The notes beneath the pieces are model-generated. The model was not told the origin of the DNA. It did no database searches and saw nothing but the letters and a program-made list of their open reading frames with translations. 64,000 nucleotides of DNA, from contig NC_042997.1 in the NCBI RefSeq assembly GCF_006345805.1, positions 130,572,001 to 130,636,000 on the forward strand, written 5' to 3'. Positions 30,207 to 52,393 of this stretch are shown here, piece after piece (the first letter of the stretch is position 1; each line of letters begins with the position of its first letter). This stretch comes from Octopus sinensis. Its lineage: Eukaryota. Position numbers and translations under genes: made by a program.

Positions 30207-30312
30207 TTAAAATACAAAAGCTATCCAATTAGTTGTTATCATTAAGATAAGAAGTAGAAGAGACATTTTCACATTTGGTCCAGTTGCCACCCGGCAATGT
30301 AAAAGATGTAAC
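30207..30312 (-). CDS. Gene 2 terminal exon (LHLLHCRVATGPNVKMSLLLLILMITTNWIAFVF*), GPI-signal-like
   Basis: tttatttcag acceptor in the required phase 2; supplies a terminal Cys-Arg and a hydrophobic tail with no cytoplasmic residues; AATAAA on the - strand at 30105-30110. Confidence 0.8.
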
Positions 30313-32683
30313 CTGAAATAAAAAGAGTATTTTTGAAATAGTTATGTCACTTCTGAAGTTTTATGGAATATTGTGTTGTGTCAAAAGTTTTAAACAATAT
30401 GCTGGTATCGTATTTGCTTTATTCATCAAGTTTCATCAAAAGCAGTCTAGTGTAGCGGCACAAGCAGTCAGCACCATATTGGATGAGATCTCACAGCAGC
30501 CATTGCCATCTCTGAGACTGGAGCGAGACCTCACCTGCATCCATTTGCCATGTGCGAGATCACAACGAGGCTTGCGATGGCAAACTGTATATAAGGGCAA
30601 AACAGAAACAGATTGATTTTCTCTCTCTCTGCTTCTACGCAGTGGCGCTTGCTAAGCACACTTCACTGGCTGTGCTTGTCTGCATGTTGTACCTCCAGAG
30701 GCAATGTGCCTGCACTAATGGAGATACAACACCACACACACAGCTCGAAATGGTTGCTGAGAGTAACGCACTTCACCTGTTCTGTGAAACTTGTAAATAA
30801 ACCAGTTGTAAATCACATTTGTCGGAACCTGAACTACACAAAGAACAAGATATAATGGGAGAAGGCAATATTCTCCTGATATCGTAAACCTTGCCTTCCA
30901 TTATACTAGCATTCAAAGTAGAGGCCACCATGTTGCACCATCTGAAGTCGCCTTTCTATCAGTTCTTTAATTCTATGTTCATACCAGTTCTTGTTCTTTG
31001 AGGTGAAGAACTCCTTCACTGAAGCTTCCACTCTCTCTTTGTTGATGAAGTGTTGTGATTGCAGGAAGTGAACCATGAATCAGAACTTTAAATGCTAGGC
31101 TGCTTGTGTTGTGGCTTGATGAATGAAAGAAATAAGTTACCAAGATATTGCAAAACTTTTGACTCAACACAGTATTAAAAGAGCAGTTTACATGCATTTA
31201 ATTTGCATCTCCAAACGAGTCATCATCATATCAATTAGCATCCATATTCGTGCATCCATGGCACATTAAAAATACCAGTCGAGCGTGATCGTTACCTGCA
31301 TCACCTTACTAGTACCTGTGCTGGTGGCACATGAAAAACATTTGAGCAAGGTCGTTGCCAGTGCCTCTGGACTGGCTCCTGTGCTGGTGGCACATAAAAA
31401 GCAGCACTTGAGTGTGGCTGTTGCCAGTACCGCCTGACTGGCCCTCGTGCCAGTGGCATGTAAAAGCACCCACTACACTCTCAGAGTGGTTGGGATTAAG
31501 GAAGGGCATCCAGCTGTAGAAACTCTGCCAGATCAGATTGGAGCCTGGTGCAACCATCTGGTTCGCCAGTCCTCAGTCAAATCGTTCAACCTATGCTAGC
31601 ATGGAAAGCAGACGTTAAGCGACGACGATGATGATGATGATTCCATGCTGGCATGGGCTGGATGGTTTGACAGGGTTTGATAGGTCAGGGGACTGCATCA
31701 AGCTCCAATGTTTGATTTGGTATTGTTTCTATGGTTTCTAAGCCCTTCCTAGCTCCAACCACTTTAGAGAGGGTACAGAGTGTTAATTGTTTTTTTGCTA
31801 CTGCCACTAATGAGGTCACCTAGCAGCTTGCAAAACATGACCTCATGATTGGGCAGAAGGATGTGGTATAAAGGGAAAAGGCTTATGTCAGATGTTGACG
31901 AGCAAGAATATGGTAGATGAAGAGAAACAAATGTCTTGCTGTATAAAAACTTAAATCAATATAATTTTTGTTAGTAACCCAAAAGTTAACCAATCTCATC
32001 ATCATCATCATCATCATCATTATCATCGTTTAACGTCCGTTTTCCATGCTAGCATGGGTTGGACGGTTCAACCCGGGGTTTGGGAAGCCAGGAGGCTGCA
32101 CCAGGCTCTAGTTTGATCTGGCAGTGTTTCTACAGCTGGATGCCCTTCCTAATGTCAACCACTCCATGAGTGTAGTGGGTGCTTTTTACATGCCACCGGC
32201 ACAGGTGCCAGGGGAGCATGGCAACAGCCACAATCGGTTGGTGCTGTGACATCATAATATTGTTTATTTACTGTAACCGATATCAGGTTCAGTTCTCATC
32301 CCCACTTGTGTTTATTTTAATTATCCAGGCTATAGACTGTTCTTGGGAACCCCTGTGTACCAAATCAGTCAAAGAATTCAGGCAAAGGGAAAGTTCCAAG
32401 ATCCGAACATGCAAGTAGAGTTTAAAACTATGAGAACTGTGAAAGTAAACCTAGAAGATACACAAACCCTGGTTAATAAAGAAGAATGCAAAATTCTAGT
32501 GCCCTCGGGAAATTGGCCTTGCTTAGTATGCAGAAAAGGTGTCTGTCGGACCCTTAAAGTATGCATCCAGTGTAAAGTATGTATACATCTTTGATGGCAA
32601 GTCTGCTCAATCTGACCAAAGGGTAAACAACCACCACCACTGCCGCCGCCGCCGTCACCACCACCACCGCCACCACCACCATC

Positions 32684-32714
<31 letters not shown>

Positions 32715-35502
32715 AAACAGCAACAGCAGCAGCAACAATAATCCTTTCTACTGTAAACACAAGGCCTGAAATTTTGGGGGAGGGCCTAGTTGACTACATC
32801 AACCCCCAGTACTCAACTGGTACTTAATTTATCGATCCCGAAAGGATGAAAGGCAAAGTTGATCTCAGTGGAATTTGAACTTGGAAGATAGCAACAGACG
32901 AAATACCTATTTCATTACAACCCACAAGGGGCTAAACACAGAGAGGACAAACGGATTAAGTCGATTATATCGACCCCAGTGCATAACTGGTACATATTTA
33001 ATCGACCCCGGAAGGATGAAAGGCAAAGTCGACCTCGGCGGAATTTGAACTCAGAACATAGCGGTAAACAGAATACCGCTAAGCATTTCGCCTGGTGTGC
33101 TAACAATTCAGTCAGTTTGCAGCCATAACAACAATAACAATAATAACTACAACAATAGCAGGACTTATCAATGTCTGTGCAACCAACAGTTTGCATACAT
33201 TGATTCACAACTAACTCGTTAGAATCATCAACATAAATGCCAAGTATTTATTTAATTTACAACTTACCTGTTGGGTTCACCTTGCATTTTCTTTGACCAT
33301 TCCAGCTCCAGACTGACCCCTTCAAACCAAGTTTGTGCATCTTCAAAAGGATATTCATAACCTTGTTTACACTTACAGGCATAATTACCCAGACCAAAAC
33401 CAAAACCTGTCAGTGGGGAACACTGTAAAGAAAAGAATTGTAAAAAGTTTTCTTCTAACGAGAGCCAAAAGTTGGTGCTTGCCATCAGACATAACATACA
33501 AACAGTGTGTGCATGCGCGTGTGTATGTGTGTGTGTGTGTCTGTGTGTGTGTGTGTCTGTGTGTGTATGTGTGTGTGTGGAAGGGTGAGTACAGAATATT
33601 TTGCTGTCATTCTTTTGTCCTCGATCATCCCTGATTGCACAAACCTATGATCAAGGCCATGAGAATCCAGTCAGATATATAATGGCAGATGGTGGTGATA
33701 TATAATATAATATCCAAGGCGGCGAGCTGGCAGAACCGTTAGCACGCCGGGCGAAATGCGTAGCCATATTTCGTCTGCCATTACGTTCTGAGTTCAAATT
33801 TTGCCAAGGTCGACTTTGCCTTTCATCCTTTCGGGGTCGATAAATTAAGTACCAGTTACGCACTGGGATCGATAAATTAAGTACCAGTTACGCACTGGGG
33901 TCGATGTAATCGACTTAATCCGTTTGTCTGTCCTTGTTTGTCCCCTCTATGTTTAGCCCCTTGTGGGTAATAAAGAAACAGATATATAATATCCAGTCAG
34001 ATATATAATAACAGATGGTGGTGAGCTGGCAGAAATGTTAGCACGCCGGGCGAAATGCTTAGCGGTATTTTGTCTGCCGTTACATTCTGAGTTCACATTC
34101 TGCCAAGATCAACTTTACCTTTCATCCTTTCGGGGTCGATTAAATAAGTACCAGTTACGCACTGGGGTCGATGTAATTGACTTAATCTGTTTGTCTGTCC
34201 TTGTTTGTCCCCTCTATGTTTAGCCCCCTGTCAGCAATAAAGAAATATATATAATAGCAGACTCTCATAGTTCAAGAAAGACAGTTCTGCAGTTTCTTGC
34301 TGAACAACCTGTACAAATGATTCGTTTATAGTGATCAAATGTAAGTGTTGTTCATTAGTTCACTCCCTCCAAGAAATTGATGTTACCTGGGCAGGTGTAT
34401 GGTGTTCCACTCAATATTTGTTGGCGTGATCACAGAGCAGGGCAAGATGATGTGTTTTGTTAAAGAACACAATGTACCACCTGGTCCAAGAATTGAAACT
34501 ATGACCTTCTGATTGTGAGTGCAACATCCTAGGCCATATTCTCTCACCTGGCACTTCGTCACTTACAATGACAAGGGTTCCAGTTGATCCGATCAATGGA
34601 ACAGCCTGTTCATGAAATTAGCATGCAAGTGGCTGAGCACTCCACAGACACATGTATCCTCAACATAGTTCTCAGGGAGATTCAGCATGACACAGAATGT
34701 GACAAGGCTGGCCCTTTCAAATTCAGGTACAACTCATTTTTGCCAGCTGAGTGAACTGGAGTAACGTGGAAAAAAGTGTCTTGATCAAGGACACAGTGTG
34801 TTGCCAGGAATCGAACTTGTGACCTTATGATTGTGAGCCAAATACCATAACCACTAATCTAGGCACCTTCACTTTGCTGTCACCACACATACATGCACAC
34901 ACACTCACGTGGACATAGTTTAGGGCCTTGAATTACTAGAAATGAACAGGAGTTATAAAACTAAAGTGAATTAAGTGTTGTAATAGATTTTAAAAAAAAA
35001 CATTTTTTTCTTATTTTTACCATAAAACATTCAAATCTACAAAACTGTAAAATATACAAATTATATTTAGAAGCTTTACCTTTGTAGATGGTGGACATAA
35101 AGCAGTGTTTTTAAAAGCATTAGCAATGTAGAATGGTTGGTGGCACTGATTAATATCTAAGAACTTCAGGTCTATGTCAATCAAAACAATACCTCTAGAA
35201 ATAAAGGAAAAATTAAATAAGATCTGACCAGCACATAAAGCTGTAAATAACATAAAATTATACCAAGCGGATTAACTCTCTGAGTTTAATAGAGTACTTT
35301 ATGATAGAGTATCTGTGGCACTTTCTACTATATAACATAGGGACCCCAAAATGTGGATAGTATCACATTAGACTGTTTTAATCTTTCTCTTTCTACAGTT
35401 TTTCTCTTTCTTATTTGTAGTCTACAAAAAACACTTGACAATGCTCCATATCTAAAAAGAGAAACTTCACTAAACCTTCATTAAATGAACAATCACTCTC
35501 TT

Positions 35503-35534
<32 letters not shown>

Positions 35535-38500
35535 AGAATTTTTTGTGTAATAAGATAAAAAACCAAGGCTGTATAGATATTAGAGCATTTATAGATAGTA
35601 AGGTCTTACGCGAAAAATTCTTATATACACACGTTGACATAGAACCAATGTTGAACCATTTATTTGCAATATTACCGAATCTGGAACTTAAATATGGTCT
35701 GTTTATAGCACTTATTCAGCATTACTTGACACCTTTGGGTCTCAATGACACCATTATCTCTTATATATATATATATCATCATCATCATCATCATCATTTA
35801 GCGTCCGCTTTCCATGCTAGCATGGGTTGGACGGTTCAACTGGGGTCTGTGAAGCCAGAAGGCTGCATCAGGCCCAGTCTGATCTGGCAGTGTTTCTACG
35901 GCTGGATGCCCTTCCTAATGCCAACCACTCCGTGAGTATAGTGGGTGCTTTTTACGTGCCACCCGCACAGGTGCCAGACGGAGCTGGCAAATGGCCACGG
36001 ACGGATGGTGCTTTTTAAGTGCCACCAGCACAGGGCCAGGCGAGGCTGACAACGGCCACGAATGGATGGTGCTTTTTACGTGCCACCGGCACGAGGCCAG
36101 TCTGGGCAGCGCTGGCAGCGACCATATTCGGATGGTTCTCAGCTGCAATTTCCATTGATCGATTTCGATTCTGATCCTCACTTGCCTCAACAGGTCTTCA
36201 CAAGTAGAGTTTTGTGTCCCAATCTAGATGCTAAATTCATTGTACTCATTGCTGCCTCTTACAAGGAGGTGCTGAAAAGTTCCTGGTTTGGGGTGCAAGA
36301 AAATAAGGAGGATCAGTTAATTATAATTTTATTCTACATATTCCACTCTCAGATTCACATACTTTTATTGCAATGGTCCTCCAGTTTTTCTAATCCCTGT
36401 AAAAGAATTCGGAAGGTTGGGCCTACAACCAGACCTTTTGGAATACTCTTAAAGCCAGGAACTTTTCAGCACCCCATTATACATTGCCAACTGTACCTCT
36501 TTTTATGGGTTGATGGCTTATATAGTACCTTCCTTGTCAGGGATCATCAGATCAGATCAGAGTGAAGGCCCCTGTCAAAAGCATTTCCAGGTTAACAAAT
36601 GCTAAGTAAAGGGATTCATTCCTTGCTAAGCACACCTGTACTTTTCCTGTACTTACTTCACTATGAATATGGCATCAGTGGTACCTCTTCCTACCACAAA
36701 GCCAAACTACATCTCATTCAGGTCAAACCTATTCCCAATCAATTTTGTTACAATGGTTCCATCTTTTACTCTCTGCTAAGTTCCCCTTCTTTTCTCCAAC
36801 ATTTCCTTATTGTTATTTTTACATCTTGAAACTCTTTCTGTTGCTGATTACTTAGCTCTGTAGTATGAAAGTAACCTGCTGACAGTCACACAGACTGAGG
36901 CAAGTAGAGTTATAGCTCTTGTTAGGAACCCAGTAAAACAGTCGTACTAGAATGTTATACACTTTTCACAGTAAGAATTGTTAAAACGTATCAAATAACT
37001 CTAAACATTTTTGTTATTCAGAATATCAGGATTATAGAGGCAAGTAGGGAAATGGCAAAGTTCTTTGAGCTAGGACAAAATACTTTGTGGTATTTGTTCC
37101 TGTTCACTATATTCAGAGTTCAAATCCTGCCAAGCTTATCTTTGCCTGTCAACCTTCTGGTGTCGATCACATAAAAGTGCCTTGCCATGGATGTGGATTA
37201 GTAAAATAGAATATTGACAAAATGCCTTGTGGTAATAGTTCTGGTGGATCTCTATGTTCTGAGTTCTTGGTTGGTAGACTTAATCTTTTGCTCAGCTTAA
37301 AACCACCACCTCACATGCAGTGTACTATTAGAAGAGTTTACTTTGTGGCAAGCATTTGGACAAGATTTCTGGTTTGAGGAAAACTTCCACCAGAGGTCAT
37401 CATCATATCATCATCATCATTTAACGTCCACTTTCCATGCTGGCATGGGTTAGACGATTTGACTGGAACTGGTGAGCCTGAGAGCTGCACCAGGTTCCAG
37501 TCTGATTTGGTATGGTTTCTACTGCTGGATGCCCTTCTTAATGCCAGCCACTCTAAGAGTATAATGATTGCTTTTTACATGCTGCCAGCATTGGTACTAT
37601 TTACATGATGCTGGCAACAGCCACAACTACAATTTCATAGGTGCCAGCAGGGTGCTATTTACATGACACCAGCAATAGCCATAACTATGCTTTCACGAGT
37701 ACCATTTACATGGCACTGGTAACAGCCATAACTATGACTAGAATTTCACTTGGTTTGACAAGTCTTCTCAGCACTGCCTTACCAAAGGCTTCAGTTAATT
37801 GTCATTGCCTCCATGAGGCCCAACATTCGAAAGATCATGCTACCAGCAACGGCCATGATTACGATTTCATGGGTACCATTTATGTGACACAGGCAATAGA
37901 CACAACTATGATTTCACTTGGCTTGATGAGTTTCCTCAAGCACAAAATAAAGGGTCACAAATGTTGCCCTTCCCTATTCATGAAATTGTACAAGAACAAA
38001 GAAAAAGGACCTGGAAATAAGAATTTATAAATCTGAAAAAATAATAAATAAACTGTTAACTTACGTAAACTTTACAGAGGAGAGATATATATTCCGACTA
38101 AAAAATGGAACACTATAAGTGATGACCCATTTGTCAATTCTTCCATCACAACGATAAGTTGGTCCACTCCATCGACCAGACTTAAAAGTAGGTGCTTTGT
38201 AAACCAAATCACTGTATTTGAAGTGGCTTTGATATGTTCCATTGATATTAGATCGCACAAATGCTTTAATATGGAATTCTTTCAATTCACTTATATTTGA
38301 TCTAAAACGTTCTTTTGCTGTTTTGAACCCTGGTGTATTCAAATAACTCTCTTTCAATCCTGCAGCATCTATTGCCCAAAAACCTTGATCGTTTCTATAA
38401 GCCCAAGGTCCAAAGAGGGCCTTTTCTGTTCCATCAGCTCCAATAAACTGGTAGCTGTCAAAAAGTACAGCAGAAGAAAGTATTTTGTGGTCTGACATCA

Positions 38501-39879
38501 CGTTAGCTAAAACCTCAGCAAATATGTGATCTTCTTGAAGTTGTTGTCCTCCATCCAGTATTCCAAAATGTACATTATACTCATTGTTTTGTAAAAAACT
38601 GCTCAGAAAATGCGCCAGACGTAGAGCTGTTCTGGCCTGAGATTCAAACTGTTTTTCAGCTCCATATATTACTGACCCAGACAATGACAAGCTTGATGGA
38701 GGTTGTTTATGACAGTTTATGTTATTTATAACACCCATTTTTTTCATAAGAGTTTTTATCTTAGCAGCATTACTTTTATCATAAGCATTTCGACGATGGC
38801 GTGAAGTGCTACGTCTGATATTTCTTTTCGTATTTAATGTACTCTGCTGTTGCCTGTACATTGTTGTATTGTAATGTTTTCCCAGATGTACTTTGCGATC
38901 TGAAATACAAAATGTCAATGATAAAGTTAGCATTCTATATACTATTTGCATTTGGTGGGAATGTGAAAGCGTTGAAGATGTATGGTTATTAAGGAATTTC
39001 AATTCTAGCTCACATACATCCATTACCAATGTCAACTAGATTACACACTGAGATGTGGTGCAACCACTTCCAAATAGAAGATGGCTGAAACCCCAAGACA
39101 TCTTTTACTGAGAGTCAGCCACTTGCATCCAGGCTTGTTTGGATATCATTCTTATTCTGCAAGACTGTCTTTAAATGTGACATGCAGGCCACTGATACCA
39201 ACTTATCAAGTTGGAAAGCCTTGACAGCAGATCACATCAGGGAACGACACATTGGGTTGTGAAATCTTATTATCAAGAATTACAGGTGATCATGGTGGCA
39301 GAACCTTTGTTTATAGGCCTGTTTAGAGTTACAGCAAGACCTATGACCTATGACTTTGGTCTTGGTCTGCAAAGGATTAAACTGGGACCACCACTACCAA
39401 CAACAACAACAACAATAATTCTTTTAGAGACTCAACTCAGAGAACCTGTCATGCTGGTGAAGCTCCCTATTATCATTGAATGGTACAGTAGCACTTCAGC
39501 AGACCAAAATATCACAGGCATTAACCATTCCCATGTAATTCTGTTATTAATTTATACTATATTTTATACTATATTATTTTATACTAGCTTAAAAGCCGCA
39601 CTTTGTGTGGACTTTTGAGCTAGCTCCCGTGGAGATCTAATTGGGCCTGTGGCCCTAAACTAAAGAGAGCTAAATAGCATGACTATAATACAGTTCTATA
39701 TTTAAGAGATGAGGAATTATGTACATTATTTACAATTGATGGATATTTGTCCTCATCTTGTTTGTTGTTACCAGAACATTTCTGTTGATATACCCTCCAA
39801 CCTTCATCAGGTGTCTTGGGGAAATTTCGAACCTGGGTTCTCATTCCTAAGGTATTTTACGATGTTATTATAATTATCA

Positions 39880-39931
<52 letters not shown>

Positions 39932-40065
39932 CATTATTATCATTATCATTATTATTATTATTCAGGTCACTGCCTGGAATCGAACTCGGAATCTTGGGTT
40001 AAGAGTGTGGGCTACTAACCCCAAGATTCCAAGTTCGATTCCAGGCAGTGACCTGAATAATAATA

Positions 40066-40117
<52 letters not shown>

Positions 40118-40854
40118 CAACAACAACATCGAAAAGTGCCTTAGGAATGAGAACCCAGGTTCGAAATTTCCCCAAGACACCTGATGAAGGTTGGAGGGTA
40201 TATCAGCCGAAATGTTGTATTAACAAAAACATGATGAGGACAAATATCCATCAATTGTAAATAATGTAAATAATGAGCATGACTATAAGATGTCTATAAT
40301 GACAATATGAGAATTAATTCTGTAAAGCAATCATTCTATTGCTCCAGTCCCAAGTTGAATTCCAACTGTTGGTCAATTTGTCTCAAAGTTCTTATCTTGA
40401 CATAAAATTAATGAAGCAGATGTCATTTATCTCCCCCTTGATCTCTGCTGTCATCTGACAAAGGCCAACCAAGATGGTGGGAATTAGCCAAGATTTATCT
40501 GCTAGAAATAGCACCCCAAATGTTTTAAATCATATTCCAATGCTTGATGTTCAAGAACCAAATGGAGGGCATATTTTCAATCTTGGGATAACTCTGACCC
40601 CAAAAAGGTATATATCCATGTAGAGCAAATGTAGACTGACATACAGGGGTCCCAGATGGACAGACAGAAGTTCACTTTCATTTTTATAGATGATGTTGTC
40701 TGTGAACCATAATGTCAGTGGTTATAAGGTTCCAAGAGGCCTGCATTTCTCATGGCAAGAGTGACAAAGAAGTATCTCGGCAAGTTGGGAAGAATACTGC
40801 AAAGTATTTTTGCTAAATGCACTGGTTTATCAGTAACTGTATAACTTTCCCCCG

Positions 40855-40935
<81 letters not shown>

Positions 40936-43192
40936 CCACATACCCCCTCCCCCCACACACACATTCACAGATACTCACATGTGCACTCACACATACATAT
41001 TCTTTTCTACTCTAGGCACAAGGCCTGAAATTTTGGGGGAGGGGAGGTAGTTGATTAGATTGACCCCAGTATGCAACTAGTCCTTAATTTATCAACCCTG
41101 AAAGGATGAAAGGCAAAGTCGACCTCGGTGGACTCACACATACATATTACTTACGTTGAATGGGAGTGCATGTGAAACCATACTCGTATTCCTCTTGAGT
41201 AGCTTGTTCTATTAGTGATCCTTGGAATGGTGGTTTAATTTGGGATGGGTATTTATAGCCTTGTTTGCAGACACATTTGTAACCTCCTCGTTTAAAGCCA
41301 TAACCAGATACATGCTTGCACTGAAAAATTAAAATAACATCTTTTAGATATTAGGATATACACATATGTAGGCGTAAGAGTGGCTGTGTGGTAAGTAGCT
41401 TGTTTACGAACCACATGGTTCCGGGTTCAGTCCCACTGCATGGCACCTTGGGCAAGTGTCTTCTACTATAGCCTTGGGCCGACCAAAGCCTTGTGAGTGG
41501 ATTTGGTAGACGGAAACTGAAAGAAGCCTGTCATATATATGTGTATATATGTATATTTGTATGTGTGTGTATATGTTTGTGTGTCTGTGTTTGTCCCCCC
41601 AACATCGCTTGACAACTGATGCTGGTGTGTTTACGTCCCCCGTAACTTAGTGGTTCATCAAAAGAGACCTATAGAATAAGTACTAGGCTTACAAAGAATA
41701 AGTCCTGAGATCGATTTGCTTGACTAAAGGTGGTGCTCCAGCATGGCCGCAGTCAAATGACTGAAACAAATAAATGAGAGAGAGTAAAAGAGTACAAGTA
41801 GACTTACCATATTTGATGGCCTATAAGATGCATGAGTGCATAGGACACACCCTAGCCTAGGCTATACTTTTGTAAAATAAATTACCACCAAAATAATGTT
41901 TAATTCCTCCACTTACCTGTATAAATTTATGTTATTACCAGTAATTATAAGCAATTTATTGCAGCCAGATTCAATATAAACATCCCATAGGCGATTGTTC
42001 ACCAATAGATGGCAGCACATGTTTTGTAAACATACATATTGTTTTGAGTGAGTTTTGAACCAACATTATGTGCATTGGATGCAGGGTTTCCTTAAAGTCA
42101 CTTTTGGGTAAAAAAAAAAGCTGTGTCTTATAGGCCTTCAAATACAGTATGTTTGATATTCCTTAGAATATATTTGTTATTATTAAGGCAGTATTTCATC
42201 TGTCACTATGTTCTGAGTTCAAATTCTTCCGAGGTTGACTCTGCCTTTCATCCTTTTGGAGTCGATAAATTAAGTACCAGTTGTGTACTGGGTCAATCTA
42301 ATTGACTGGCCCCTTACCCCAAAATTTCAGGCCTTGGGCCTATACAATTTTATATTTAAGAGATGAAGAATTATGTACATTATATACATTATTTACATTT
42401 GACGGATATTTGTCCTCATCTTGCTTGTTGTTATCAGAACGTTTCGGCTGATATACCCTTCAGCCTTCATTGGGTGTCATGGGGGAAATTTTGAACCTGG
42501 GTTCTCATTCCTAAGGTATTTTTCGATGTTGTTGTTGTTGTTGTTGCTGTTCTTCTTCTTCTTCTTCTTCTTCTTCTTCTTCTTCTTCTTCTTCTTCTTC
42601 TTCTTCTTTTTCTCCTTCTCCTTCTCCTTCTTCCCCTTCTCCTTCTTCTCCTTCTCCTCCTCCTCCTCCTCATTATTATTCAGGTCACTGCCTGAAATTG
42701 AACTCGGAATCTTTGGGTTAGTAGCCTGCACTCTTAACCACTATGCCATATGCCTCTAGTAGAAAGGATTATTATTATTATTGAGTGAGAGAGTAGTGCA
42801 TGCCATCAAAGTGACACTGGGGTAAAATATACGAAGCCCAGTATACCCATCATGACTACCCGTCTGATAAGGGTACACCAGGCACATGCATCACAACCAT
42901 ATGTGCGTGATATGGTGATCTCTAATGAAGATAAACAGCACATGACCTTGCAGGTGGGGCCCAGTTAGAATTTTCTTCTGGTCGAGTAACCCATCCCACT
43001 CAAAAGGTCCTTGAATAAGAGTTATTTAAGGATGTTAAATGAAACACCCATGTTTCCAGAGGTGAATTATTTAAACCCCAAATAATCCCTCTCAACACAT
43101 GGCTATGATGCTCCCCACTACTTCTGCTCGTGATCAGAGATGCACATATCATCAGCCACTAAGGGACATGCTCAACTGGTTAAGGTCAAACA

Positions 43193-43252
<60 letters not shown>

Positions 43253-45104
43253 GGTGGTGAGCTGGCAGAATCATTATCATGCTGGGCGAAATGTTTAGCT
43301 GTATTTCGTCTGCCACTGTGTTCTGAGATCAAATTCCTCCAAGGTCGACTTTGCCTTTCATCCTTTCAGGGTTGATAAATTGAGTACCAGTGAAACACTG
43401 GGGTTGATGAAATCAACTATCTCCTCCCCCAGTTATTAATCCTTGTGCCTATAGTAGAAAGTATTATTATTATTAAGGTGGTGAGGGGGGCAAAATGCTT
43501 AGCAGCATTTCATTTGTCTTTATGTTTTGAGTTCAAATTCTGCTGAGGTCAACTTTACCTTTCATCCTTTCGGGGTCCATAAATTAAGTATTAGGTCATC
43601 AAGTATGAAATTTGTAGAAAAGTAAAGAAAGTTTGCTAATATTTTATAAATACAAGGAATGGTTTTATTCCTCAAAGTATGCACCCATATTGTCAATATG
43701 CTTTTGCCATTTTAGCAGTCGCTTGTCCAGCCTGGAACTGTAAAAGCCTGGCAAGTAAAATCTTGGAAAGCCTATTTTACAGCATCGTCGGAATTAAATC
43801 TTTTTTCTATCAAAAAGTTATTTAAATTCTGGAAGAAGTGGTAGTCAGTGGAAGCAAGATGAGGTAGTATAGTGGATGACAGAGAATTTCCAACTCAAAC
43901 TTCTGTAGTTTCGCCAATGTCATTTTTGCGATGTGTGGTCTGGCATTGTCTTGCAATAAAATAGGAGTGGATCTGTTAACTAATTTAGGCTGTTTTTTGT
44001 AAGTTTTTGCATCATTTGGTCCAGTTGGCTGCAGTATACTTTGGCTGTGATTGATGAGCCATGATTAACGAAATCATAATGGACCACACCTGTGCCAAAC
44101 CACCAAACACACACCATCAGTTTCTTTTGATGAATTTTGCTATTTGTACTGTGTTTTGGTGGCTCGTCTTTGTCCAACCATTATGCTGAACATTTACGGT
44201 TGTTGTATTGGAAACATTTCTCGTCACATGTTACAATTTGATTCAAAGATGATTAATTTTTGTGATGAGAAAGTAGCATAATGCAGGCTTCCAAACGTTG
44301 CTGTTTCTGATTTTCATTGAGTTCATGTGGAACCCACTTATCCAAATTTTTCACTTTACCGATTTGAACTAGGTAAGTGAATATTGTAAGTGAGGGCATC
44401 CAGCTGTAGAGAATCTACTACAACAAATTCTATCTCACCCATGCAAATATGGAAAAGTGAACATTAAATTTTGATGATGATGACAACACTGATGATGATG
44501 ATGACATTTTTGGAGATGGGAATATTGGTACACTCTAGTAGTGGTGTGAACCAAAGGTACAGTAATGTAACGTGGGTATGGCAGTCTAAGATAAACGTGA
44601 TATATAACAGTTCTCCCAGTATAATTATACCTTTGTTGTTGGTTTACATCTGTCAATTCCAGCAAGATAATTTGGTAAAGGATTTCCAATGCTTATAGGA
44701 CAGGCATTAAAATCAATTTTTCGAAAGTATGTATCCATGGTAACCAATGCCACTATTCTATAAAAAATAAAATAAAAACAATAAAAATATACTCACATAC
44801 ACAATCAAAAACAAAACGAAGTAAAATGGCATATATTTGTAATTGTAAAATTTCAGCTGCTTCACAGAATGACAAAAAATATAGGAAATACTAAGAAAGA
44901 AAAAAGGTTCAATTTGTTGAAAAACATTTGAACACATAGATGCAGGAATGGCTGTGTGGTAGGTAGCTTGCTTACCAACCACATGATTCTGGGTTCAGTC
45001 CCATTGGGTGGCACCTTGGGCAAGTGTCTTCTACTATAACCTTGGGCTGACCAAAGCCTTGTGAGTGGATCTGGTAGACAGAAACTGAAAGAAGCCCATT
45101 GAAC

Positions 45105-45169
<65 letters not shown>

Positions 45170-47969: not shown

Positions 47970-48009
<40 letters not shown>

Positions 48010-48054
48010 TTATATAATGTGTGTGTGTGTATGTATATATATATATATATGTAT

Positions 48055-48090
<36 letters not shown>

Positions 48091-50589
48091 GCATGATAGA
48101 CCTCCACATAGTTTACATCTACTAAATTCATTCACAAGGTGTTGATTAGTACAGGGCTATAGTATAAGACACTTGCCCAAGGTGTCACACAGTAGGACTG
48201 AACCCAAAACTGTGTAGTTGAAAAGCAAGCTTCTTAACCATACAACCACGCTGCACCTATAAAAAATATAAATTGAATATAAGAAGCAGAATATAAATAC
48301 TGTATTAAACAACCGAAACTTTTATGAAAATATTTAACCTTCTGTTTTACCTTGGTCTCCTCATATGTGTATAACGTAAATATCTTGGCATGAAATCAAT
48401 CACAGGTGAGACAGCAGAGACTATCCATTCATTTGACTTTCCACAGTCAAAATATGGTTGAGTAAACCTCACAGGAAGTATTTCATCCATGAAATGCTGA
48501 CCAGGAACACTTGGTCCAAAGAAACCTGAAATATTAAAATCTTCACTGTCGAACTGTCCTGGTCTGCTTGAATATTTTATACCCACAGTATATTTATATT
48601 TTATCAAAGAATCTTTTTCATTACGCACATCTGGCATATTCCATAAAGAGTACCAAATATTTGTTTTACTCCTTCTACTTGTATAATTGAAGAGACCTAG
48701 AAAAAAAAGAAAAAAAAGACAATAAATTACATTGTAAAAAGTCAATGAAAGAAATATTAAACTTACAAAACTATTAATATCATTGTCATTTGCCAAGGTT
48801 GACTTTGCCTATCATTTTTGCAGGGTTGATAAAGTAGTTACCAGTTGAGGACTAGGGTTGATATAAAAGAAATAGCAATCTGGAAAGGACCAGGCCTGAA
48901 TGAAGTACAAGGTTGCATAACTGGATGACTGCCTGCAGGTAGGTCATGTTCTTGCCTGGATGACAAGTGGGTGAATGTTACTATGCTTCAAGGATCCCTT
49001 GAAAGGGAACTTGGCATTAAATTTTTGACCTGTTACTTGTTTACCACTTATATGGAAGCTTATGACTGGTGTTTTGGCAGAAGAGTTATACAGCCATCTG
49101 GAAAGTAATGATCTACTTCCAGAAGAATGGAAAAGATGCAGGAAACAATGTAGGGCAACAAAATATCACTTATTAGCTGATAAAATGATAATTAGAAATT
49201 GTAGACACAGATTGACAGGACTGAGTATAGCATGGCCGGATTACAAAAAAGCATATGACATGGTACCACATAGTTGGATATGTAAAACAAAGAGCATATT
49301 TGGAATAACAAAAAACATGGAGAAAATGCTTAATGAAAGTATGAAATATTGGAATATTGAACTAATCAGGAAAAAACAAAGACTCAGAGAAGTGAATATC
49401 AGACATGAAATATTCCGAGGTAATAGCTTATCTCCATTACTATTCATATTGGCTATGATACTGTGCACTATTTGGGAAAAGGAAATGGTCAGATACTGTG
49501 CACTATTTGGGAAAAGGAAATGGTCAGATAAATCATCTCCTTTTCATGGAGATGATATAAAGGTTTGTGCGTAAAATGAGAAAAGCTTGAAAGTCTTGTA
49601 TATACTATCTGGGTTTTTTCAAATGATGTAGGTATGGAATTTGGGGTAGAAAAGTGTGATATTTTGAAAATGAAACAAGGAAGATTTAAAAGAAGCCAGG
49701 GAAGTGAAATGCCAAATGAGCAAACAGTGAGAGTGGTCAAGGACAGTGGTTTAAGTATTTGGGAATACTGGAAGCAGATGAGATAAAAAATGAAGAAATG
49801 AAACAAATTGCCAGTAGGGAGAACATAAGGGGAGTCAGAAAATGATTGCAGTCAAAGCTGGATTCTGAAAATCTTATTGAAGCAATTCAATAAATTCAAG
49901 AGCAGTATCCTTAATCAGATATGGTGTTGGAATTATAGTCTGGACCAAAAATGATATAAAGAAACTTGACAGGAAAACTAGAAAGTTGTTGACAATGTAT
50001 AGAGCCTACAATCTGAAAGTTGATATCAACCAGTTGTACAGAGTGGAAGAGGCTTCCTAGCAATAGAAGAATGTGTACAGATGGAGAGAAAAAGCCCAGT
50101 AGAGGGCACAGAAAACCTACTAAGGACAGTGAATAAAGAACAGGTGATCAAATGTATAATGGGAGTAAAAGACAAGAATGAAATACAAGGAGAGCATGTC
50201 AGACAGATTAAAGGGGAACCTTTGCATGGTCAATTTTGGATGGCCACTGAAGATGTATGTGGAACAAAATCCTGGGCTTGGTTTAAAAAGGGGCAATTAA
50301 AAAAAAAGAAATAGAGAGCTTAATTGTAACAGCCCAGGATCAAGCAATAAAAACAAACCACTTGAGAAAAAATACATATGGAGAGAATGTGTCAGAAAAA
50401 TGGAGAGCCTGTGAAACTTAGAATGAGTCAGTGGCACACATTGGGGAAGAATGCACCAAGTTGGCGCAGGAAGAGTATAAGAAATGGACACATGACCAGT
50501 TTGTAAAAGTTTTATACTGGAAACTTTGCCAGAAATGGGGATTTGAAGTTGGAAAGACATGGTACAATCACTGAGTTGAAATAATAATG

Positions 50590-50640
<51 letters not shown>

Positions 50641-51639
50641 GTATAAATATATATATGCATATATATATATATATGTATAAATATATATATGCATATACTT
50701 AACTGGTACATCACACGTATTGAGAAGAGCATTGTCGATGTGAGAACTGTTGCTGCTCATGTATTTTAATTTAACTTAAAAAAAAAAATTTAAAAAAATG
50801 AACGAACTATTGAGTTTGGTTTAATGGCCTACCAATGTATACTATGAGTTTCTTTGCCCTAGGAGTCGGGAAGACACTCGGCAAGAAATGGAAGCAAATT
50901 TGAAAGAAGAAAAAAAGAGTAATAATAATAATAATAACGGTTTCAAATTTTGCCATGAGGCAGCCATCTTGGGAGAAGGGATAAATTGATTACATCGCCC
51001 CAGTGTTTCACTGGTACTTAATTTATCGAGCCCGAAAGGATGAAAGACAAAATTAACCTTGGTGGAATTTGAACTCAGAACGTAAAGACGGCTGAAATGC
51101 CACTATGCATTTTACCCAGCATGCTAATGAATCCGCCAGCATGCCACCTTAGTAATAATAACAATAATAATAATAAAAATAATAATAATAATAATAACCA
51201 ATCGATATAAACGTATCTGTCAAGACCTACCAAAAACTGAGTAAATATAAAGATCTTGAAATAGAAATCAGCAAAATGTGGAACCTGAAGACTAAAACAA
51301 TACCTGTTGTCATAGGTGCCCTGGGAATGATAGCAAAAGGGGCTGATTGCTACCTAACTCAAGTACCAGGAAACCCCAAAATGGCAGAAATTCAAAAGAT
51401 AGTGCTCATAGGAACTGCTCATATCCTACGCAAAATACTTTCTATGTAATCTCAAGTTTGCACCATCATAATTTTCTTATGGTTTTTTTAAACATTCACT
51501 AGTACAACACTAAGTACAAAACCAAATATATGGTACCCTAGGCATAACACCAACATGAACTTCCAACTTGTTGTCTCTTGATGTCTCTGGGTGAAACTTG
51601 GAGCCAACTTGTAGAAATGTAAAGCAAAAATCAAACATA

Positions 51640-51718
<79 letters not shown>

Positions 51719-52393
51719 TATAATAATAAAAATAACAGCACTAGTCATTGTAGGAGAAAAAAATGCTTTATGTTTACCTGTTCCCATGTCAACAACTTTT
51801 GTGGATCTCATTGTTGGTTCACGCAAAAAATTTTCTGAATCTCTTGTATCATCGTATCTCCAGGCTGATGGTGCAAACAAAGGTAGAGTTTTATTAAAAG
51901 CTAAGAACCTCAACCAGTTTGGATAATGACAGTTGTTATCAAAAAATATGGAACTTCCATTGACAAGGTTAGGGTGAGAGTTAACATTAGCTGTGACACT
52001 CATATAAAGATACAACCATCCAGGTAGATTAAGAAAATCCTTCGATTGATTAAACCTTTGCAGCATGAAACTGTGAAAGTAGGCTCTATTTAATGCTAAA
52101 TTGTGGAGATGAACTAATCCAGTTCTGTTGCGATAGAAAACTTTGCTCAAGAGTTGGTTGTATCGTGGTATCTGTGAAACAGTGTCTGGAGATAGGAGAA
52201 GATCAGATTTCAGTTTCGAATGGCAGTTCTTTTCAGTGATACTTTTCATATAGCTATCAAGGTGATCAAACTTGTCTTTTTTCTGCCAGTCCCATAGTGA
52301 GCTCTGACTAAGTCTTATCATTCCTACGATGAGAAGCAAACTGTACAGGGTCAGAGGAGATGCTGAGCCAAAGAACTTATATCTTATCGACAT
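30207..52393 (-). CDS. Gene 2: 821-aa secreted/GPI-anchored protein with two tandem GPR158/GPR179-like ectodomains (Cache-like plus Cys-rich EGF-like), no 7TM; complement(join(30207..30312,33268..33422,35080..35194,38065..38899,41155..41320,44631..44757,48351..48696,51778..52393))
   Basis: Exon lengths 616+346+127+166+835+115+155+106 = 2466 nt give 822 codons. All introns are GT-AG with matching phases. Motifs PYFDCG..W, W..P.YRCDG...W.ITYSVPFF, DINQC and G.GF..G.Y.C.CK.GY.YP resemble GPR158-family ectodomains (recognised from memory, no search run). There is an N-terminal signal peptide and a C-terminal hydrophobic tail. Confidence 0.88.
30885..31130 (-). mobile_element. mariner transposase C-terminal remnant
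   Basis: FLQSQHFINKERVEASVKEFFTSKNKNWYEHRIKELIERRLQMVQHGGLYFEC* resembles the Mos1-type C-terminus. Confidence 0.7.
33268..33422 (-). CDS. Gene 2 exon 7 (CSPLTGFGFGLGNYACKCKQGYEYPFEDAQTWFEG...EPNR)
   Basis: ctttacag acceptor, gtaagt donor, phase 0-2. Confidence 0.92.
35080..35194 (-). CDS. Gene 2 exon 6 (GIVLIDIDLKFLDINQCHQPFYIANAFKNTALCPPSTK)
   Basis: tttctag acceptor, gtaaag donor, phase 2-0. Confidence 0.92.
36262..36479. mobile_element. mariner-type MITE
   Basis: TIR-like ends GGTGCTGAAAAGTTCCTGG and CCAGGAACTTTTCAGCACC, TA flanks. Confidence 0.7.
38065..38899 (-). CDS. Gene 2 exon 5: basic linker with RHRR plus most of repeat 2
   Basis: gtatttcag acceptor, gtaagt donor, phase 1-2; matches ORF 38061..39035. 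Confidence 0.92.
39584..40693 (-). mobile_element. non-autonomous Helitron, interrupted by the foldback element at 39689-40275
   Basis: - strand 5' TC(ATC)TATAAAAATGAAAGTG..CTGTCTGTCC; 3' hairpin CCACAC-AAA-GTGCGG then CTAG followed by T. Confidence 0.62.
39689..40275. mobile_element. foldback (head-to-head) copy of a tRNA-headed, hammerhead-tailed SINE
   Basis: Inverted arms 39722-39999 and ~40017-40268; 13-bp TSD agcatgactataa at 39676-39688 and 40276-40288. Confidence 0.85.
41155..41320 (-). CDS. Gene 2 exon 4 (CKHVSGYGFKRGGYKCVCKQGYKYP...EQATQEEYEYGFTCTPIQ)
   Basis: tttttcag acceptor, gtaagt donor, phase 0-1; not in the ORF track. Confidence 0.92.
42341..42755 (-). mobile_element. full-length single copy of the same tRNA-headed, hammerhead-tailed SINE
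   Basis: Head GGCATATGGCATAGTGGTTAAGAGTGCAGGCTACTAACCCAAAGATTCCGAGTTCAATT, then (GAA)n/(AAC)n, then the same 3' tail as 39689-39850. Confidence 0.8.
43585..44370 (-). mobile_element. degenerate mariner (DD34D) element
   Basis: DKDEPPKH...KKLMVCVWW..GVVHYDF...ITAKVYCSQL and downstream LLLQDNARPH-like motif. Confidence 0.85.
44631..44757 (-). CDS. Gene 2 exon 3 (IVALVTMDTYFRKIDFNACPISIGNPLPNYLAGIDRCKPTTK)
   Basis: tttttttatag acceptor, gtataa donor, phase 2-0; not in the ORF track. Confidence 0.88.
47688..47745 (+). ncRNA. candidate type I hammerhead ribozyme, canonical CUGAAGA core
   Basis: ATTCTA-CTGAAGA-GGC(aaaGCATttcttATGCaaa)GCC-a-GAA-ATC-tgg-GAT-C-TTGAAT; one stem I mismatch, one extra A before GAAA. 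Confidence 0.5.
48351..48696 (-). CDS. Gene 2 exon 2 (GLFNYTS...TQPYFDCGKSNEWIVSAVSP...RRPR)
   Basis: ttttctag acceptor, gtaaaa donor, phase 1-2. Confidence 0.92.
48880..50578 (+). mobile_element. R4/Dong-like (RLE) non-LTR retrotransposon, degenerate RT and CCHC region
   Basis: PVTCLPLIWKLMTG, DYKKAYDMVPHSWI, SLSPLLF and C..C....ESVAHI...C motifs with stops and frameshifts; ends in (AAT)n. Confidence 0.85.
51199..51640 (+). mobile_element. R4/Dong-like 3' fragment (RLE C-terminus plus 3' UTR) inside (AAT)n
   Basis: KLSKYKDLEIEISKMWNLKTKTIPVVIGALG...ILRKILSM*, flanked on both sides by (AAT)n. Confidence 0.85.
51778..52393 (-). CDS. Gene 2 coding exon 1: signal peptide plus start of repeat 1
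   Basis: ATG at 52393, MSIRYKFFGSASPLTLYSLLLIVGMIRLSQS; donor gtaaac after DMGTG, phase 1. The rest of ORF 51488..52393 is intronic (ATT)n readthrough. Confidence 0.9.

What the first reader, a model, noticed from the sequence alone, without database searches (positions are those of the whole stretch)
30207..52393. 7TM-less, tandem GPR158/179-ectodomain protein with a GPI-like tail
Seen: a complete 821-aa frame with signal peptide, two homologous modules (each ending D.N.C...C...C..G.GF..G.Y.C.CK.GY.YP) and a terminal exon CRVATGPNVKMSLLLLILMITTNWIAFVF* with no cytoplasmic residues. Established: GPR158, GPR179 and Drosophila Smog are class C-related GPCRs with one Cache-like plus EGF-like ectodomain before a 7TM, and GPR158 is reported to bind glycine through its Cache domain. 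Inference: a receptor-less, doubled sensor acting as decoy, ligand sink, co-receptor or trans-synaptic adhesion molecule. Similar uncharacterised invertebrate proteins may already be in databases; I know of no functional description.
Basis: partly seen in the sequence, partly recalled or inferred. Interest (0 to 1): 0.8.

Follow-up and report, generated by a model that had tools for sequence, protein, structure and literature searches.

The report
Receptor-less double GPR158-type sensor protein
This octopus gene really encodes a membrane-tethered protein made of two copies of the sensor head of the brain glycine receptor GPR158 with no receptor body, and it belongs to an unstudied family found across molluscs, worms and insects, including fruit flies.

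Summary
An 8-exon, all GT-AG gene on the minus strand (52393 to 30207) encodes 821 aa. It is identical to Octopus sinensis XP_029641233.1, an "uncharacterized protein".

- **Fold:** both halves match the GPR158/179 ectodomain by Pfam (PF22572 twice). By predicted fold, the best PDB match for both is GPR179; GPR158 also matches module 2, followed by bacterial dCache sensors.
- **No 7TM:** none appears in the roughly 230 complete tandem relatives, in scallop transcripts, or in open frames across the 30 kb downstream.
- **Tail:** the C-terminus (conserved Cys-Arg, small residues, spacer, about 15 hydrophobic residues, then the end) is shaped like a GPI signal across the family.
the family spans protostomes and is very conserved in insects (louse vs fly 73%). 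Spiralian members, this one included, carry a conserved furin-type site (RHRR, residues 452-455) between the modules.

Most likely it is a cleaved, GPI-anchored, two-module binding subunit that needs a transmembrane partner. In layout it resembles calcium-channel alpha2delta, but it is not a member of that family. Function, ligand, GPI anchoring and cleavage are all untested. I found no literature on the family. I rate it a new variant of a known kind, of moderate interest.

The parts
51778..52393 (-). Exon 1 (616 nt). Holds the ATG at 52393, the signal peptide (residues 1-31, window 52301-52393), and module 1's N-terminal helices and first part of its Cache-like domain.
   Evidence: tblastn 100% identity plus GT donor; translation; hydrophobic residues 8-26; conserved sequons N89, N145, N167.
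48351..48696 (-). Exon 2 (346 nt). Rest of the module 1 Cache-like core, up to ...THMRRP/R.
   Evidence: AF2 strands.
44631..44757 (-). Exon 3 (127 nt). Last Cache strand and the start of the EGF-like region of module 1 (IVALVTMDTYFRKIDFNAC...TTK).
   Evidence: It is followed by a phase-0 intron directly before Cys364.
41155..41320 (-). Exon 4 (166 nt). EGF-like Cys-rich end of module 1 (CKHVSGYGFKRGGYKCVCKQGYKYP...FTCTPIQ).
   Evidence: weak Pfam EGF_CA match.
38065..38899 (-). Exon 5 (835 nt). Basic inter-module linker, then module 2's N-terminal helices and Cache-like core.
   Evidence: the linker has 12 K/R against 1 D/E in 46 aa; AF2 pLDDT 90.9.
38790..38801 (-). Predicted furin/proprotein-convertase site RHRR (residues 452-455), with cleavage after R455.
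   Evidence: translation. R-x-[KR]-R occurs at this position in 57/59 spiralian relatives against 2/130 ecdysozoan ones; the background is 0.008 per 60 aa.
35080..35194 (-). Exon 6 (115 nt). Last Cache strand and the start of the EGF-like region of module 2 (GIVLIDIDLKFLDINQC...STK).
   Evidence: It is followed by a phase-0 intron directly before Cys736, the exact counterpart of intron 3.
33268..33422 (-). Exon 7 (155 nt). EGF-like Cys-rich end of module 2 (CSPLTGFGFGLGNYACKCKQGYEYP...GEPN).
   Evidence: aligns to GPR158 residues 264-361 and GPR179 residues 228-323.
30207..30312 (-). Exon 8 (106 nt including the stop). Holds the last conserved Cys793-Arg794 and the GPI-signal-like tail (ATGPNVKMSLLLLILMITTNWIAFVF, window 30210-30287). 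No cytoplasmic residues follow.
   Evidence: family-wide tail statistics.
30105..30110 (-). Candidate poly(A) signal AATAAA, 96 nt after the stop codon.
   Evidence: This is weak evidence: in this AT-rich DNA one such hexamer is expected per roughly 1 kb.

Best explanation
**What it is (shown).** This is a genuine, conserved protein-coding gene, O. sinensis LOC115216171. The product enters the secretory pathway. It consists of two GPR158/GPR179-type ectodomain modules, each with N-terminal helices, a Cache/PAS-like sensor and an EGF-like cysteine knot. There are 8 conserved cysteines per module. There is no 7TM domain and no cytoplasmic part.

**Predicted processing (inferred).**
1. The signal peptide is removed after Ser31.
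2. The last 25 or so residues are exchanged for a GPI lipid anchor near Ala796, three residues after the last structural cysteine. Module 2 would then sit on the membrane as it does on TM1 in the receptors.
3. A furin-type convertase cuts the basic linker after Arg455.
4. Module 1 stays bound without a covalent link to the GPI-anchored module 2. The pair would imitate the side-by-side ectodomain homodimer of GPR158/179.

**Predicted role (inferred).** Having nothing inside the cell, it cannot signal alone. I commit to this: it is the ligand- or matrix-binding subunit of a complex with a separate transmembrane partner, working as a co-receptor or auxiliary subunit. Calcium-channel alpha2delta also combines Cache domains, cleavage and a GPI anchor. 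The ligand may be a small amino-acid-like molecule in a Cache pocket, heparan-sulfate proteoglycans, or both. It is not known.
For: **Gene model:** exact, identical to RefSeq.

**Modules:**
- Pfam PF22572 matches twice, E = 6e-42, and MCP-like PDC matches module 2, E = 2e-7.
- By sequence, GPR179 and GPR158 are the only PDB relatives (E = 1e-10; with the family profile, 5e-19).
- AF2 module 1 (pLDDT 84.6) has GPR179 as its best PDB fold match, E = 3e-9, followed by bacterial dCache sensors.
- AF2 module 2 (pLDDT 90.9) matches GPR179 at 9.5e-14 and GPR158 at 9.6e-9, followed by dCache sensors.

**No 7TM:**
- Of the 229 relatives that pass the filter, seven are 7TM receptors with long N-termini, so about 222 are true tandem proteins. 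Of the 229, 213 end within 45 aa of the last conserved Cys.
- The scallop orthologue is an uninterrupted 820-aa CDS in two independent Logan run assemblies of about 3 kb.
- Isoform X2 keeps the same C-terminus.
- No Pfam family, and so no 7tm_3, matches the minus-strand open frames of at least 45 codons in the 30 kb downstream.

**GPI-like tail:** the family shows a conserved C-R-x-(A/S)-G-(A/S), about 11 residues to the hydrophobic core, a core of median 15 aa (IQR 13-17, short for a TM helix), and a median of 3 residues after it.

**Furin site:**

**Secretory features:** 9 sequons, three of them at invariant positions.

**Constraint along the whole length:** both modules are equally conserved while the linker and tail are not. 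Louse and fly orthologues are 73% identical. This fits a protein with several fixed interaction surfaces.

**Precedents in the literature:**
- GPR158 ectodomains dimerise through their PAS/Cache helices (PMC8611064).
- GPR158 binds HSPGs and glycine extracellularly (bioRxiv 10.1101/2024.05.08.592949).
- alpha2delta is extracellular, membrane-associated and cleaved (PMC5092059).
Against: - No dedicated GPI predictor was available, and no experiment exists.
- Some arthropod tails end in R-R-H, which could act as a stop-transfer signal for a very short TM anchor.
- The furin motif is absent from ecdysozoan orthologues, so cleavage cannot be essential to the family's core function.
- The pseudo-dimer idea is pure inference. 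No full-length model or coordinates were available.
- No partner, ligand or expression data exist.
- No spliced transcript of the octopus gene itself was retrieved.
- Only the last 100 or so residues of each module align by sequence to vertebrate GPR158, so ligand specificity cannot be transferred.
Confidence: 0.5

Rival explanations
1. Cell-adhesion or matrix-organiser reading. The protein acts in trans by binding heparan-sulfate proteoglycans or matrix proteins on the facing cell, as GPR158 does with glypican-4 and GPR179 with pikachurin-dystroglycan. No small-molecule sensing would be involved.
For: - The known extracellular partners of GPR158/179 are HSPGs and pikachurin (PMC6203450).
- 8d1b, the GPR179-pikachurin complex, is among the best fold matches.
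- The linker is strongly basic, with 12 K/R against 1 D/E, and could bind heparan sulfate.
- GPI-anchored adhesion molecules are common (own knowledge).
Against: - The basic linker is not conserved in arthropods.
- Invariant polar and aromatic residues inside the module 2 Cache core are shared with the 7TM relatives (F581, P583, D596, W662). This looks more like a conserved pocket or core than a surface patch.
- Nothing here tests binding.
Confidence: 0.22
2. Decoy or ligand sink. The tethered or shed ectodomain competes with the true 7TM receptors (the CG31760 / mGlyR-like genes of the same genome) for their ligand.
For: - Module 2 aligns along its full length to the ectodomains of the 7TM relatives at 142-163 bits and shares many invariant residues with them.
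- Furin cleavage and GPI anchoring both allow release from the membrane.
Against: - Conservation is very high along the whole 800 aa in insects (73% louse vs fly).
- Module 1 is as conserved as module 2 even though most of it does not align to the receptors. Both are more than a simple decoy would need.
- The family-specific invariants E547, R512 and R634 differ from the receptors.
Confidence: 0.12
3. Same protein, but the C-terminal hydrophobic stretch is kept as a single-pass transmembrane anchor with essentially no cytoplasmic tail. It would not be replaced by GPI.
For: - In P0001 the hydrophobic window scores 2.17 over 19 residues.
- Several relatives end in basic residues (RRH, RR) after the hydrophobic core.
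- No GPI predictor was run.
Against: - The uncharged core is short (median 15 aa, IQR 13-17) and interrupted by T-T-N in octopus.
- A conserved triplet of small residues sits 8-11 residues upstream of it.
- A median of only 3 residues follows it.
- The tail sequence is poorly conserved (0.32), as expected for a removed signal.
Confidence: 0.13
4. Annotation artefact. Either two neighbouring single-module genes have been fused in the model, or a real 7TM receptor's distal exons were missed, or the locus is a pseudogene.
For: - No spliced octopus transcript was retrieved here.
- A Logan contig reads from exon 1 into intron 1 (P0251).
Against: - The same two-module, 7TM-less layout is found in more than 200 proteins from four or more phyla, including uninterrupted scallop contigs assembled from public sequencing runs.
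- Module 2 has no signal peptide, and module 1 has no stop codon or hydrophobic tail.
- All junctions are in frame and canonical.
- The ORF is intact and 91% and 72% identical to those of other octopods.
- No Pfam family matches the open frames downstream.
Confidence: 0.03

Closest known systems
GPR158 (mGlyR) and GPR179, with their invertebrate relatives (Drosophila CG31760-type, 'metabotropic glycine receptor-like')
   Same: - Same Pfam ectodomain family, PF22572.
- They are the only sequence relatives in the PDB.
- They are the best fold matches for both modules.
- Same order of parts: helices, then a Cache/PAS core, then an EGF-like Cys-rich region.
- The motifs W-x-x-P-Y-F-D-C, D-I-N/D-Q-C and G-x-Y-x-C-x-C are shared.
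   Different: - The ectodomain is present twice in tandem.
- The chain stops right after the Cys that precedes the receptors' second Cys-rich 'D loop'.
- There is no 7TM and no cytoplasmic region of the kind that engages RGS7 in GPR158. A GPI-type signal takes their place.
- The N-terminal two thirds of module 1 does not align to the receptors.
- Glycine binding is untested.
Unnamed protostome family 'GPR158/179 extracellular domain-containing protein' (for example D. simulans GD20036 / XP_002102680.1, Pediculus P0090, Argopecten XP_069112096.1, Capitella CAPTEDRAFT_161811)
   Same: - Same length (about 790-900 aa, up to about 1000 in some spiralians).
- Same two modules, the same 8+8 cysteines and the same C-R-x-small tail.
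- The window gene is a member of this family.
   Different: - Spiralian members, this one included, have a longer basic linker with a furin-type site. Arthropod members do not.
- No member has a published function that I could find.
Voltage-gated calcium-channel alpha2delta subunits and Cachd1
   Same: The likeness is in how they work. These are extracellular Cache-domain glycoproteins without signalling domains of their own.
- alpha2delta is membrane-associated through a GPI-type signal and is cut into two chains (PMC5092059, PMC6249638).
- Its Cache domain binds amino acids and gabapentinoids (PMC8915833, listed; own knowledge).
- It acts as an auxiliary subunit of a transmembrane partner.
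   Different: - Not homologous beyond the generic Cache fold; Foldseek gives E of about 0.4.
- No VWA/MIDAS domain was found.
- alpha2delta chains are disulfide-linked and cut by ADAM17 (PMC9016415). Here a furin motif is present, and each module has an even set of 8 conserved cysteines.
Bacterial dCache sensor domains of chemoreceptors and histidine kinases (3lic, TlpQ 6fu4, McpU 6f9g, PctD 7prq)
   Same: These are the next-best fold matches after GPR179/158 for both modules, with E from 1e-8 to 1e-4. Pfam MCP-like_PDC_1 matches module 2.
   Different: They are periplasmic domains held between two TM helices of a signalling protein, with no EGF-like region. Sequence identity is 8-18%.

Membership tests
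GPR158/GPR179 class C-related GPCRs | GPR158_179_EC ectodomain signature (Pfam PF22572) | tested here: met
   Two matches, whole-protein E = 6.2e-42, 142.6 bits against a cut-off of 28.1. PDB sequence matches go only to GPR179 and GPR158.
GPR158/GPR179 class C-related GPCRs | Cache/PAS-like fold preceded by N-terminal helices | tested here: met
   AF2 models have pLDDT 84.6 and 90.9. The best Foldseek PDB matches are GPR179 (3e-9 and 9.5e-14) and GPR158 (9.6e-9). TM-scores are modest at 0.38-0.59.
GPR158/GPR179 class C-related GPCRs | Class C seven-transmembrane domain | tested here: not met
   Only two hydrophobic segments exist, one at each end. Pfam finds no 7tm family in the protein or in the open frames downstream. 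Relatives lack it too.
GPR158/GPR179 class C-related GPCRs | Cytoplasmic C-terminus that engages RGS7-Gbeta5 | tested here: not met
   The chain ends with the hydrophobic segment...NWIAFVF*.
GPR158/GPR179 class C-related GPCRs | [quoted passage not shown] | not testable with these tools
   The paper that defines the pocket is not held. The other papers read give no residues, and one states that no glycine-bound structure exists.
Protostome tandem GPR158/179-ectodomain family (unnamed) | Two modules in one chain with 8+8 conserved cysteines and a Cys-Arg-x-small-residue C-terminus followed by a short hydrophobic tail | tested here: met
   Aligns end to end with 51 members (35-72% identity). All 16 conserved Cys are present, and the tail pattern is shared by 213/229.
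GPI-anchored proteins | N-terminal signal peptide plus a C-terminal signal: small omega and omega+2 residues, a polar spacer, a hydrophobic end and no cytoplasmic domain | tested here: inconclusive
   My own heuristics fit. A796-T-G could be omega to omega+2, PNVKMS the spacer, followed by a 17-residue hydrophobic end. The family-wide core has a median of 15 aa. No NetGPI or PredGPI was available, and there is no biochemical test.
Proprotein-convertase (furin) substrates | Exposed R-x-[K/R]-R motif in a secretory protein, cleaved in vivo | tested here: inconclusive
   The motif RHRR at 452-455 lies in a poorly conserved basic linker. It is positionally conserved in 57/59 spiralian relatives. 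Cleavage itself was not tested.
Calcium-channel alpha2delta / Cachd1 | VWA domain with MIDAS plus dCache_1 domains | tested here: not met
   No VWA match in Pfam. alpha2delta chains appear only at Foldseek E of about 0.4. The resemblance is in layout only.

The most novel reading that the evidence does not exclude
The family is a so far unrecognised class of extracellular small-molecule sensors. Each member would be a single-chain (in Spiralia, furin-split) pseudo-dimer of mGlyR-type Cache domains, lipid-anchored to the cell surface. It would confer amino-acid or metabolite sensitivity on a separate ion channel or receptor, much as alpha2delta modulates CaV channels. It would be conserved from flatworms to flies and octopus, and absent from vertebrates.
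Probability: 0.15. Interest if true: 0.8.

Novelty: new variant of a known kind. Interest (0 to 1): 0.55.

Why it matters
GPR158/mGlyR and GPR179 are of medical interest in depression and night blindness. How their Cache ectodomain senses ligands is still unresolved, and no glycine-bound structure exists (PMC12834959).

A natural, receptor-free, doubled version of that ectodomain would be useful in three ways.
1. It would be a soluble-friendly scaffold for studying ligand binding by this fold.
2. Its Drosophila orthologue offers a genetically tractable entry point.
3. It hints that protostomes use this sensor head in a second way, uncoupled from the 7TM.

For genome annotation, many members are mislabelled. 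Names found here include 'G-protein coupled receptor 158' and 'Fras1 related extracellular matrix protein'. The family deserves its own name.

Tried and rejected
- **Motif search:** a regex for D.N.C...C...C within single reading frames found nothing, because the motif spans introns. tblastn with P0001 solved this.
- **Anchor regex:** my first regex for the start of module 2 matched no spiralian sequence. I replaced it with HMM-based positioning.
- **Glycine pocket:** the defining paper is not held. Three other papers give no residues. The family profile aligns only to GPR158 residues 261-361. From memory, E271 and D307 of GPR158 belong to the pocket. They would correspond to R668 (Asp in most relatives) and D703 here. 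This is a lead only, not a test.
- **D. melanogaster gene name and literature:** none found. Only the D. simulans, D. yakuba and similar orthologues were listed.
- **Octopus transcript:** only the genomic locus was returned.
- **7TM exons downstream:** no Pfam match in any minus-strand open frame of at least 45 codons between 1 and 30207. Shorter exons, or exons beyond the window, are not excluded.
- **Fused-genes artefact:** rejected.
- **alpha2delta membership:** rejected.

Full report

Yes. tblastn of the best database match (P0001) against the window gives eight collinear minus-strand blocks, 94.8-100% identical as raw hits. An exhaustive search of splice-site combinations returns a single solution, and its spliced translation equals P0001 exactly. 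In that solution every intron starts with GT and ends with AG behind a pyrimidine tract. The exons are 52393-51778, 48696-48351, 44757-44631, 41320-41155, 38899-38065, 35194-35080, 33422-33268 and 30312-30207. Together they make 2466 nt, or 821 codons plus a stop.

P0001 is XP_029641233.1, 'uncharacterized protein LOC115216171 isoform X1' of Octopus sinensis. The locus is on chromosome record CM016859.1 at about 130.6 Mb.

The quoted motifs and the terminal peptide are all present. The N-terminus is signal-peptide-like: MSIRYKFFGSASPLTLYSLLLIVGMIRLSQS|S. Orthologues are 91% identical in O. bimaculoides and 72% in Argonauta, so the frame is under constraint.

**2. What are the two modules?**

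Pfam finds GPR158_179_EC (PF22572) twice (E = 6e-42). It also finds the first PDC domain of MCP-like sensors on module 2 (E = 2e-7) and weak EGF signals on module 1. The two halves match each other at E = 3e-16 over their last 124 or so residues.

By sequence, the only meaningful PDB relatives are GPR179 and GPR158. The E-values are 1e-10 and 3e-9, improving to 5e-19 with a 52-sequence family profile. The alignment covers only about 100 residues: the last Cache strands and the EGF-like region.

I therefore predicted each module separately with a 52-sequence alignment.
- Module 1 (residues 30-420) gave pLDDT 84.6 and pTM 0.84.
- Module 2 (residues 470-795) gave pLDDT 90.9 and pTM 0.86.

Foldseek against the PDB ranks GPR179 first for both, at 3e-9 and 9.5e-14. 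GPR158 follows for module 2 at 9.6e-9. After these come bacterial double-Cache sensor domains: the 3lic histidine kinase, TlpQ, McpU and PctD. TM-scores are only 0.38-0.59, because the modules carry extra loops.

Each module has eight conserved cysteines at equivalent places: 57/481, 290/669, 340/714, 358/730, 364/736, 379/751, 381/753 and 414/793.

The gene structure mirrors the duplication. Introns 3 and 6 are both phase 0 and lie directly before Cys364 and Cys736. Introns 2 and 5 are both phase 2 and lie within two codons of each other in the module alignment.

**3. Relation to the true receptors.**

A profile search of 1.84 billion representative proteins found 1631 relatives. Long proteins with six or seven predicted TM segments match only profile positions of about 440-800, which is module 2. 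Their source names are 'probable G-protein coupled receptor CG31760', 'metabotropic glycine receptor-like' and 'GPR158'. They include a hemichordate and a crinoid.

Module-specific HMMs confirm the asymmetry.
- Module 2 aligns along its whole length to these ectodomains, at 142-163 bits.
- Module 1 aligns only with its last 150 or so residues, at 78-105 bits.

Of 62 positions that are at least 90% conserved in module 2, 29 are shared with the receptors. They include F581, P583, D596, W662 and the Cys framework. Others, such as R512, E547 and R634, are specific to the tandem family.

In the receptors, the Cys equivalent to C793 is followed by a second Cys-rich stretch and then TM1. In the tandem family the chain ends there.

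**4. Is it really 7TM-less?**

- None of the 117 relatives from the first search has more than a terminal hydrophobic segment at each end.
- 229 sequences have a module 2 match that reaches the last conserved Cys and starts beyond residue 300. Of these, 213 end within 45 residues. The other 16 are five truncated models, four with non-standard tails, and seven 7TM receptors with long N-termini that passed the filter.
- The scallop orthologue P0010 (Argopecten irradians) is an uninterrupted 820-aa CDS with flanks on both sides, in contigs of about 3 kb assembled from two different public sequencing runs. These are most simply spliced transcripts. Many other relatives likewise sit on contigs of about 3 kb.
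- The second annotated octopus isoform differs only at the N-terminus.
- In the window, no minus-strand open frame of at least 45 codons in the 30 kb downstream matches any Pfam family.
- An AATAAA lies 96 nt after the stop codon, which is weak support.

I could not retrieve a spliced octopus transcript. That direct test remains open.

**5. The tail.**

Across the family the C-terminus reads ...R-[YF]-D-x-L-K-C-R-x-(A/S)-G-(A/S). A short polar spacer follows, then an uncharged hydrophobic core of median 15 residues (IQR 13-17), and then a median of 3 further residues. The sequence of the tail is poorly conserved (0.32 against about 0.6 for the modules), but its shape is kept.

This is the standard layout of a GPI-attachment signal. 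The core is short for a membrane-spanning helix. In the octopus protein, A796-T-G could serve as omega to omega+2, PNVKMS as the spacer and LLLLILMITTNWIAFVF as the hydrophobic end.

These are my own heuristics. No dedicated predictor was available, so I rate GPI anchoring as likely, at about 0.7, but not shown.

**6.

The linker between the modules is strongly basic, with 12 K/R against 1 D/E. It contains RHRR at residues 452-455 (window 38790-38801).

In 57 of 59 named spiralian relatives (molluscs, annelids, flatworms, rotifers), an R-x-[KR]-R motif lies a median of 26 residues before the first conserved Cys of module 2. Only 2 of 130 ecdysozoan relatives have one there. The motif occurs at 0.008 per 60 residues inside the modules. 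Several spiralian proteins have a second site at the start of the linker.

This is the consensus for furin-type convertases, a fact I take from general knowledge. In Spiralia, then, the precursor is probably cut into a free module 1 and a tethered module 2.

Each module has an even set of 8 conserved cysteines. The octopus protein has one extra, non-conserved Cys155. A conserved inter-chain disulfide is therefore unlikely, and any association would be non-covalent.

**7. Distribution.**

The family is present in molluscs, annelids, flatworms, rotifers, tardigrades, a nematomorph, chelicerates, myriapods, crustaceans and insects. The octopus genome has at least two further paralogues, P0005 and P0049.

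Insect orthologues are remarkably conserved. The Pediculus protein is 66-78% identical to its relatives across insect orders and 73% identical to the Drosophila protein.

A Drosophila orthologue exists: 807 aa, D. simulans GD20036 and counterparts in a dozen species. I could not determine the D. melanogaster gene symbol.

I saw no deuterostome or cnidarian tandem member among the full-length matches. Only the best 150 of 1631 matches were visible, though, so absence is not proven.

**8. How it most likely works.**

*Shown:* the architecture, the fold relationship, the lack of a 7TM and of cytoplasmic residues, the conserved tail shape and the conserved dibasic site.

*Inferred:* signal-peptide removal, GPI attachment, furin cleavage and association of the two modules. 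The last is suggested by the GPR158 ectodomain homodimer, which packs through helices alpha4 and alpha5 and buries 1806 square angstroms (PMC8611064). A linker of 45-200 residues could easily allow the same packing within one chain.

With nothing inside the cell, the protein must act by binding. Both modules are equally and strongly conserved along their whole length. That argues for several fixed interfaces. I therefore favour a stable subunit of a complex, a co-receptor or auxiliary subunit of a transmembrane partner, over a simple decoy.

The nearest working analogy is alpha2delta. It too is an extracellular, Cache-containing, cleaved, membrane-associated auxiliary subunit whose Cache domain binds amino acids (PMC5092059, PMC6249638 and PMC8915833). 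It is not a relative: there is no VWA domain, and Foldseek gives E of about 0.4.

A trans-acting HSPG or matrix-binding role, as documented for GPR158 and GPR179, is the main rival. It is not excluded.

**9. Novelty and verdict.**

The protein is already in RefSeq and UniProt with the domain annotated, so the sequence is not new. I found no publication describing the tandem, 7TM-less, GPI-type architecture or any function for the family. I class it as a new variant of a known kind.

The finding matters more for the breadth and conservation of the family than as an octopus peculiarity. Interest: 0.55.

Noticed in passing
window 43780-44414 (minus), inside intron 3: Remnant of a mariner/Tc1-type transposase, broken by stops and frameshifts. 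Pfam Transposase_1 matches at E = 3e-22.
   Followed up: partly
window 49062-49574 (+), inside intron 1: A 170-aa open frame with a weak reverse-transcriptase match (RVT_1, E = 2e-4, below the Pfam cut-off). Probably a LINE fragment.
   Followed up: partly
window 57263-57772 (minus), about 5 kb upstream of the gene: A 170-aa open frame with a PHD-finger match (E = 1e-6). This looks like the zinc-finger and RT-tail region of a retroelement rather than a host gene.
   Followed up: partly
window 20910-21614 (+): The longest open frame outside the gene, at 235 aa. It has an acidic middle and a proline-rich, basic end (…[23 protein letters not shown]…RRKRH) and matches no Pfam family. It may be an exon of a neighbouring gene that converges on this one.
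   Followed up: partly
window-wide, for example 2152-2470, 7507-7806, 28341-28523, 41380-41700, 44949-45210, 55853-56145; and 9437-9670, 11803-12034, 14738-14977, 32900-33250, 34026-34213, 53058-53289, 60946-61124: Two families of interspersed SINE-like repeats of about 200-320 bp. They have 13 and 23 further copies at 73-92% identity, and several lie in the gene's introns next to exons 4 and 7.
   Followed up: partly
window 39816-40184, 42421-42759, 43140-43316, 50568-50760, 51560-51740: Long trinucleotide and homopolymer-like microsatellites, which read as poly-I, poly-N, poly-L, poly-K or poly-E in the ORF lists. One begins roughly 40 nt downstream of the exon 1 donor site.
   Followed up: no
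P0247 / P0249 (isoform X2 of this gene; O. vulgaris CAI9715912.1): The annotated 627-aa isoform starts at Met195, inside the module 1 Cache domain, and has no signal peptide. It is either an annotation artefact or an alternative-promoter product that could not be secreted.
   Followed up: no
P0291 (874 aa, MetaClust only): A relative with about five predicted TM segments that carries one full module plus a second copy of the Cache-end/EGF-like part (residues 35-340 and 388-528). It may be an intermediate between the receptor and the tandem layouts. Its organism is unknown.
   Followed up: partly
Relatives: Many family members carry misleading source names for proteins that have no 7TM. Examples are 'G-protein coupled receptor 158', 'Putative g-protein coupled receptor' and 'Fras1 related extracellular matrix protein'. 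Some are fused in gene models to unrelated genes, such as 'Adrenodoxin, mitochondrial'.
   Followed up: no
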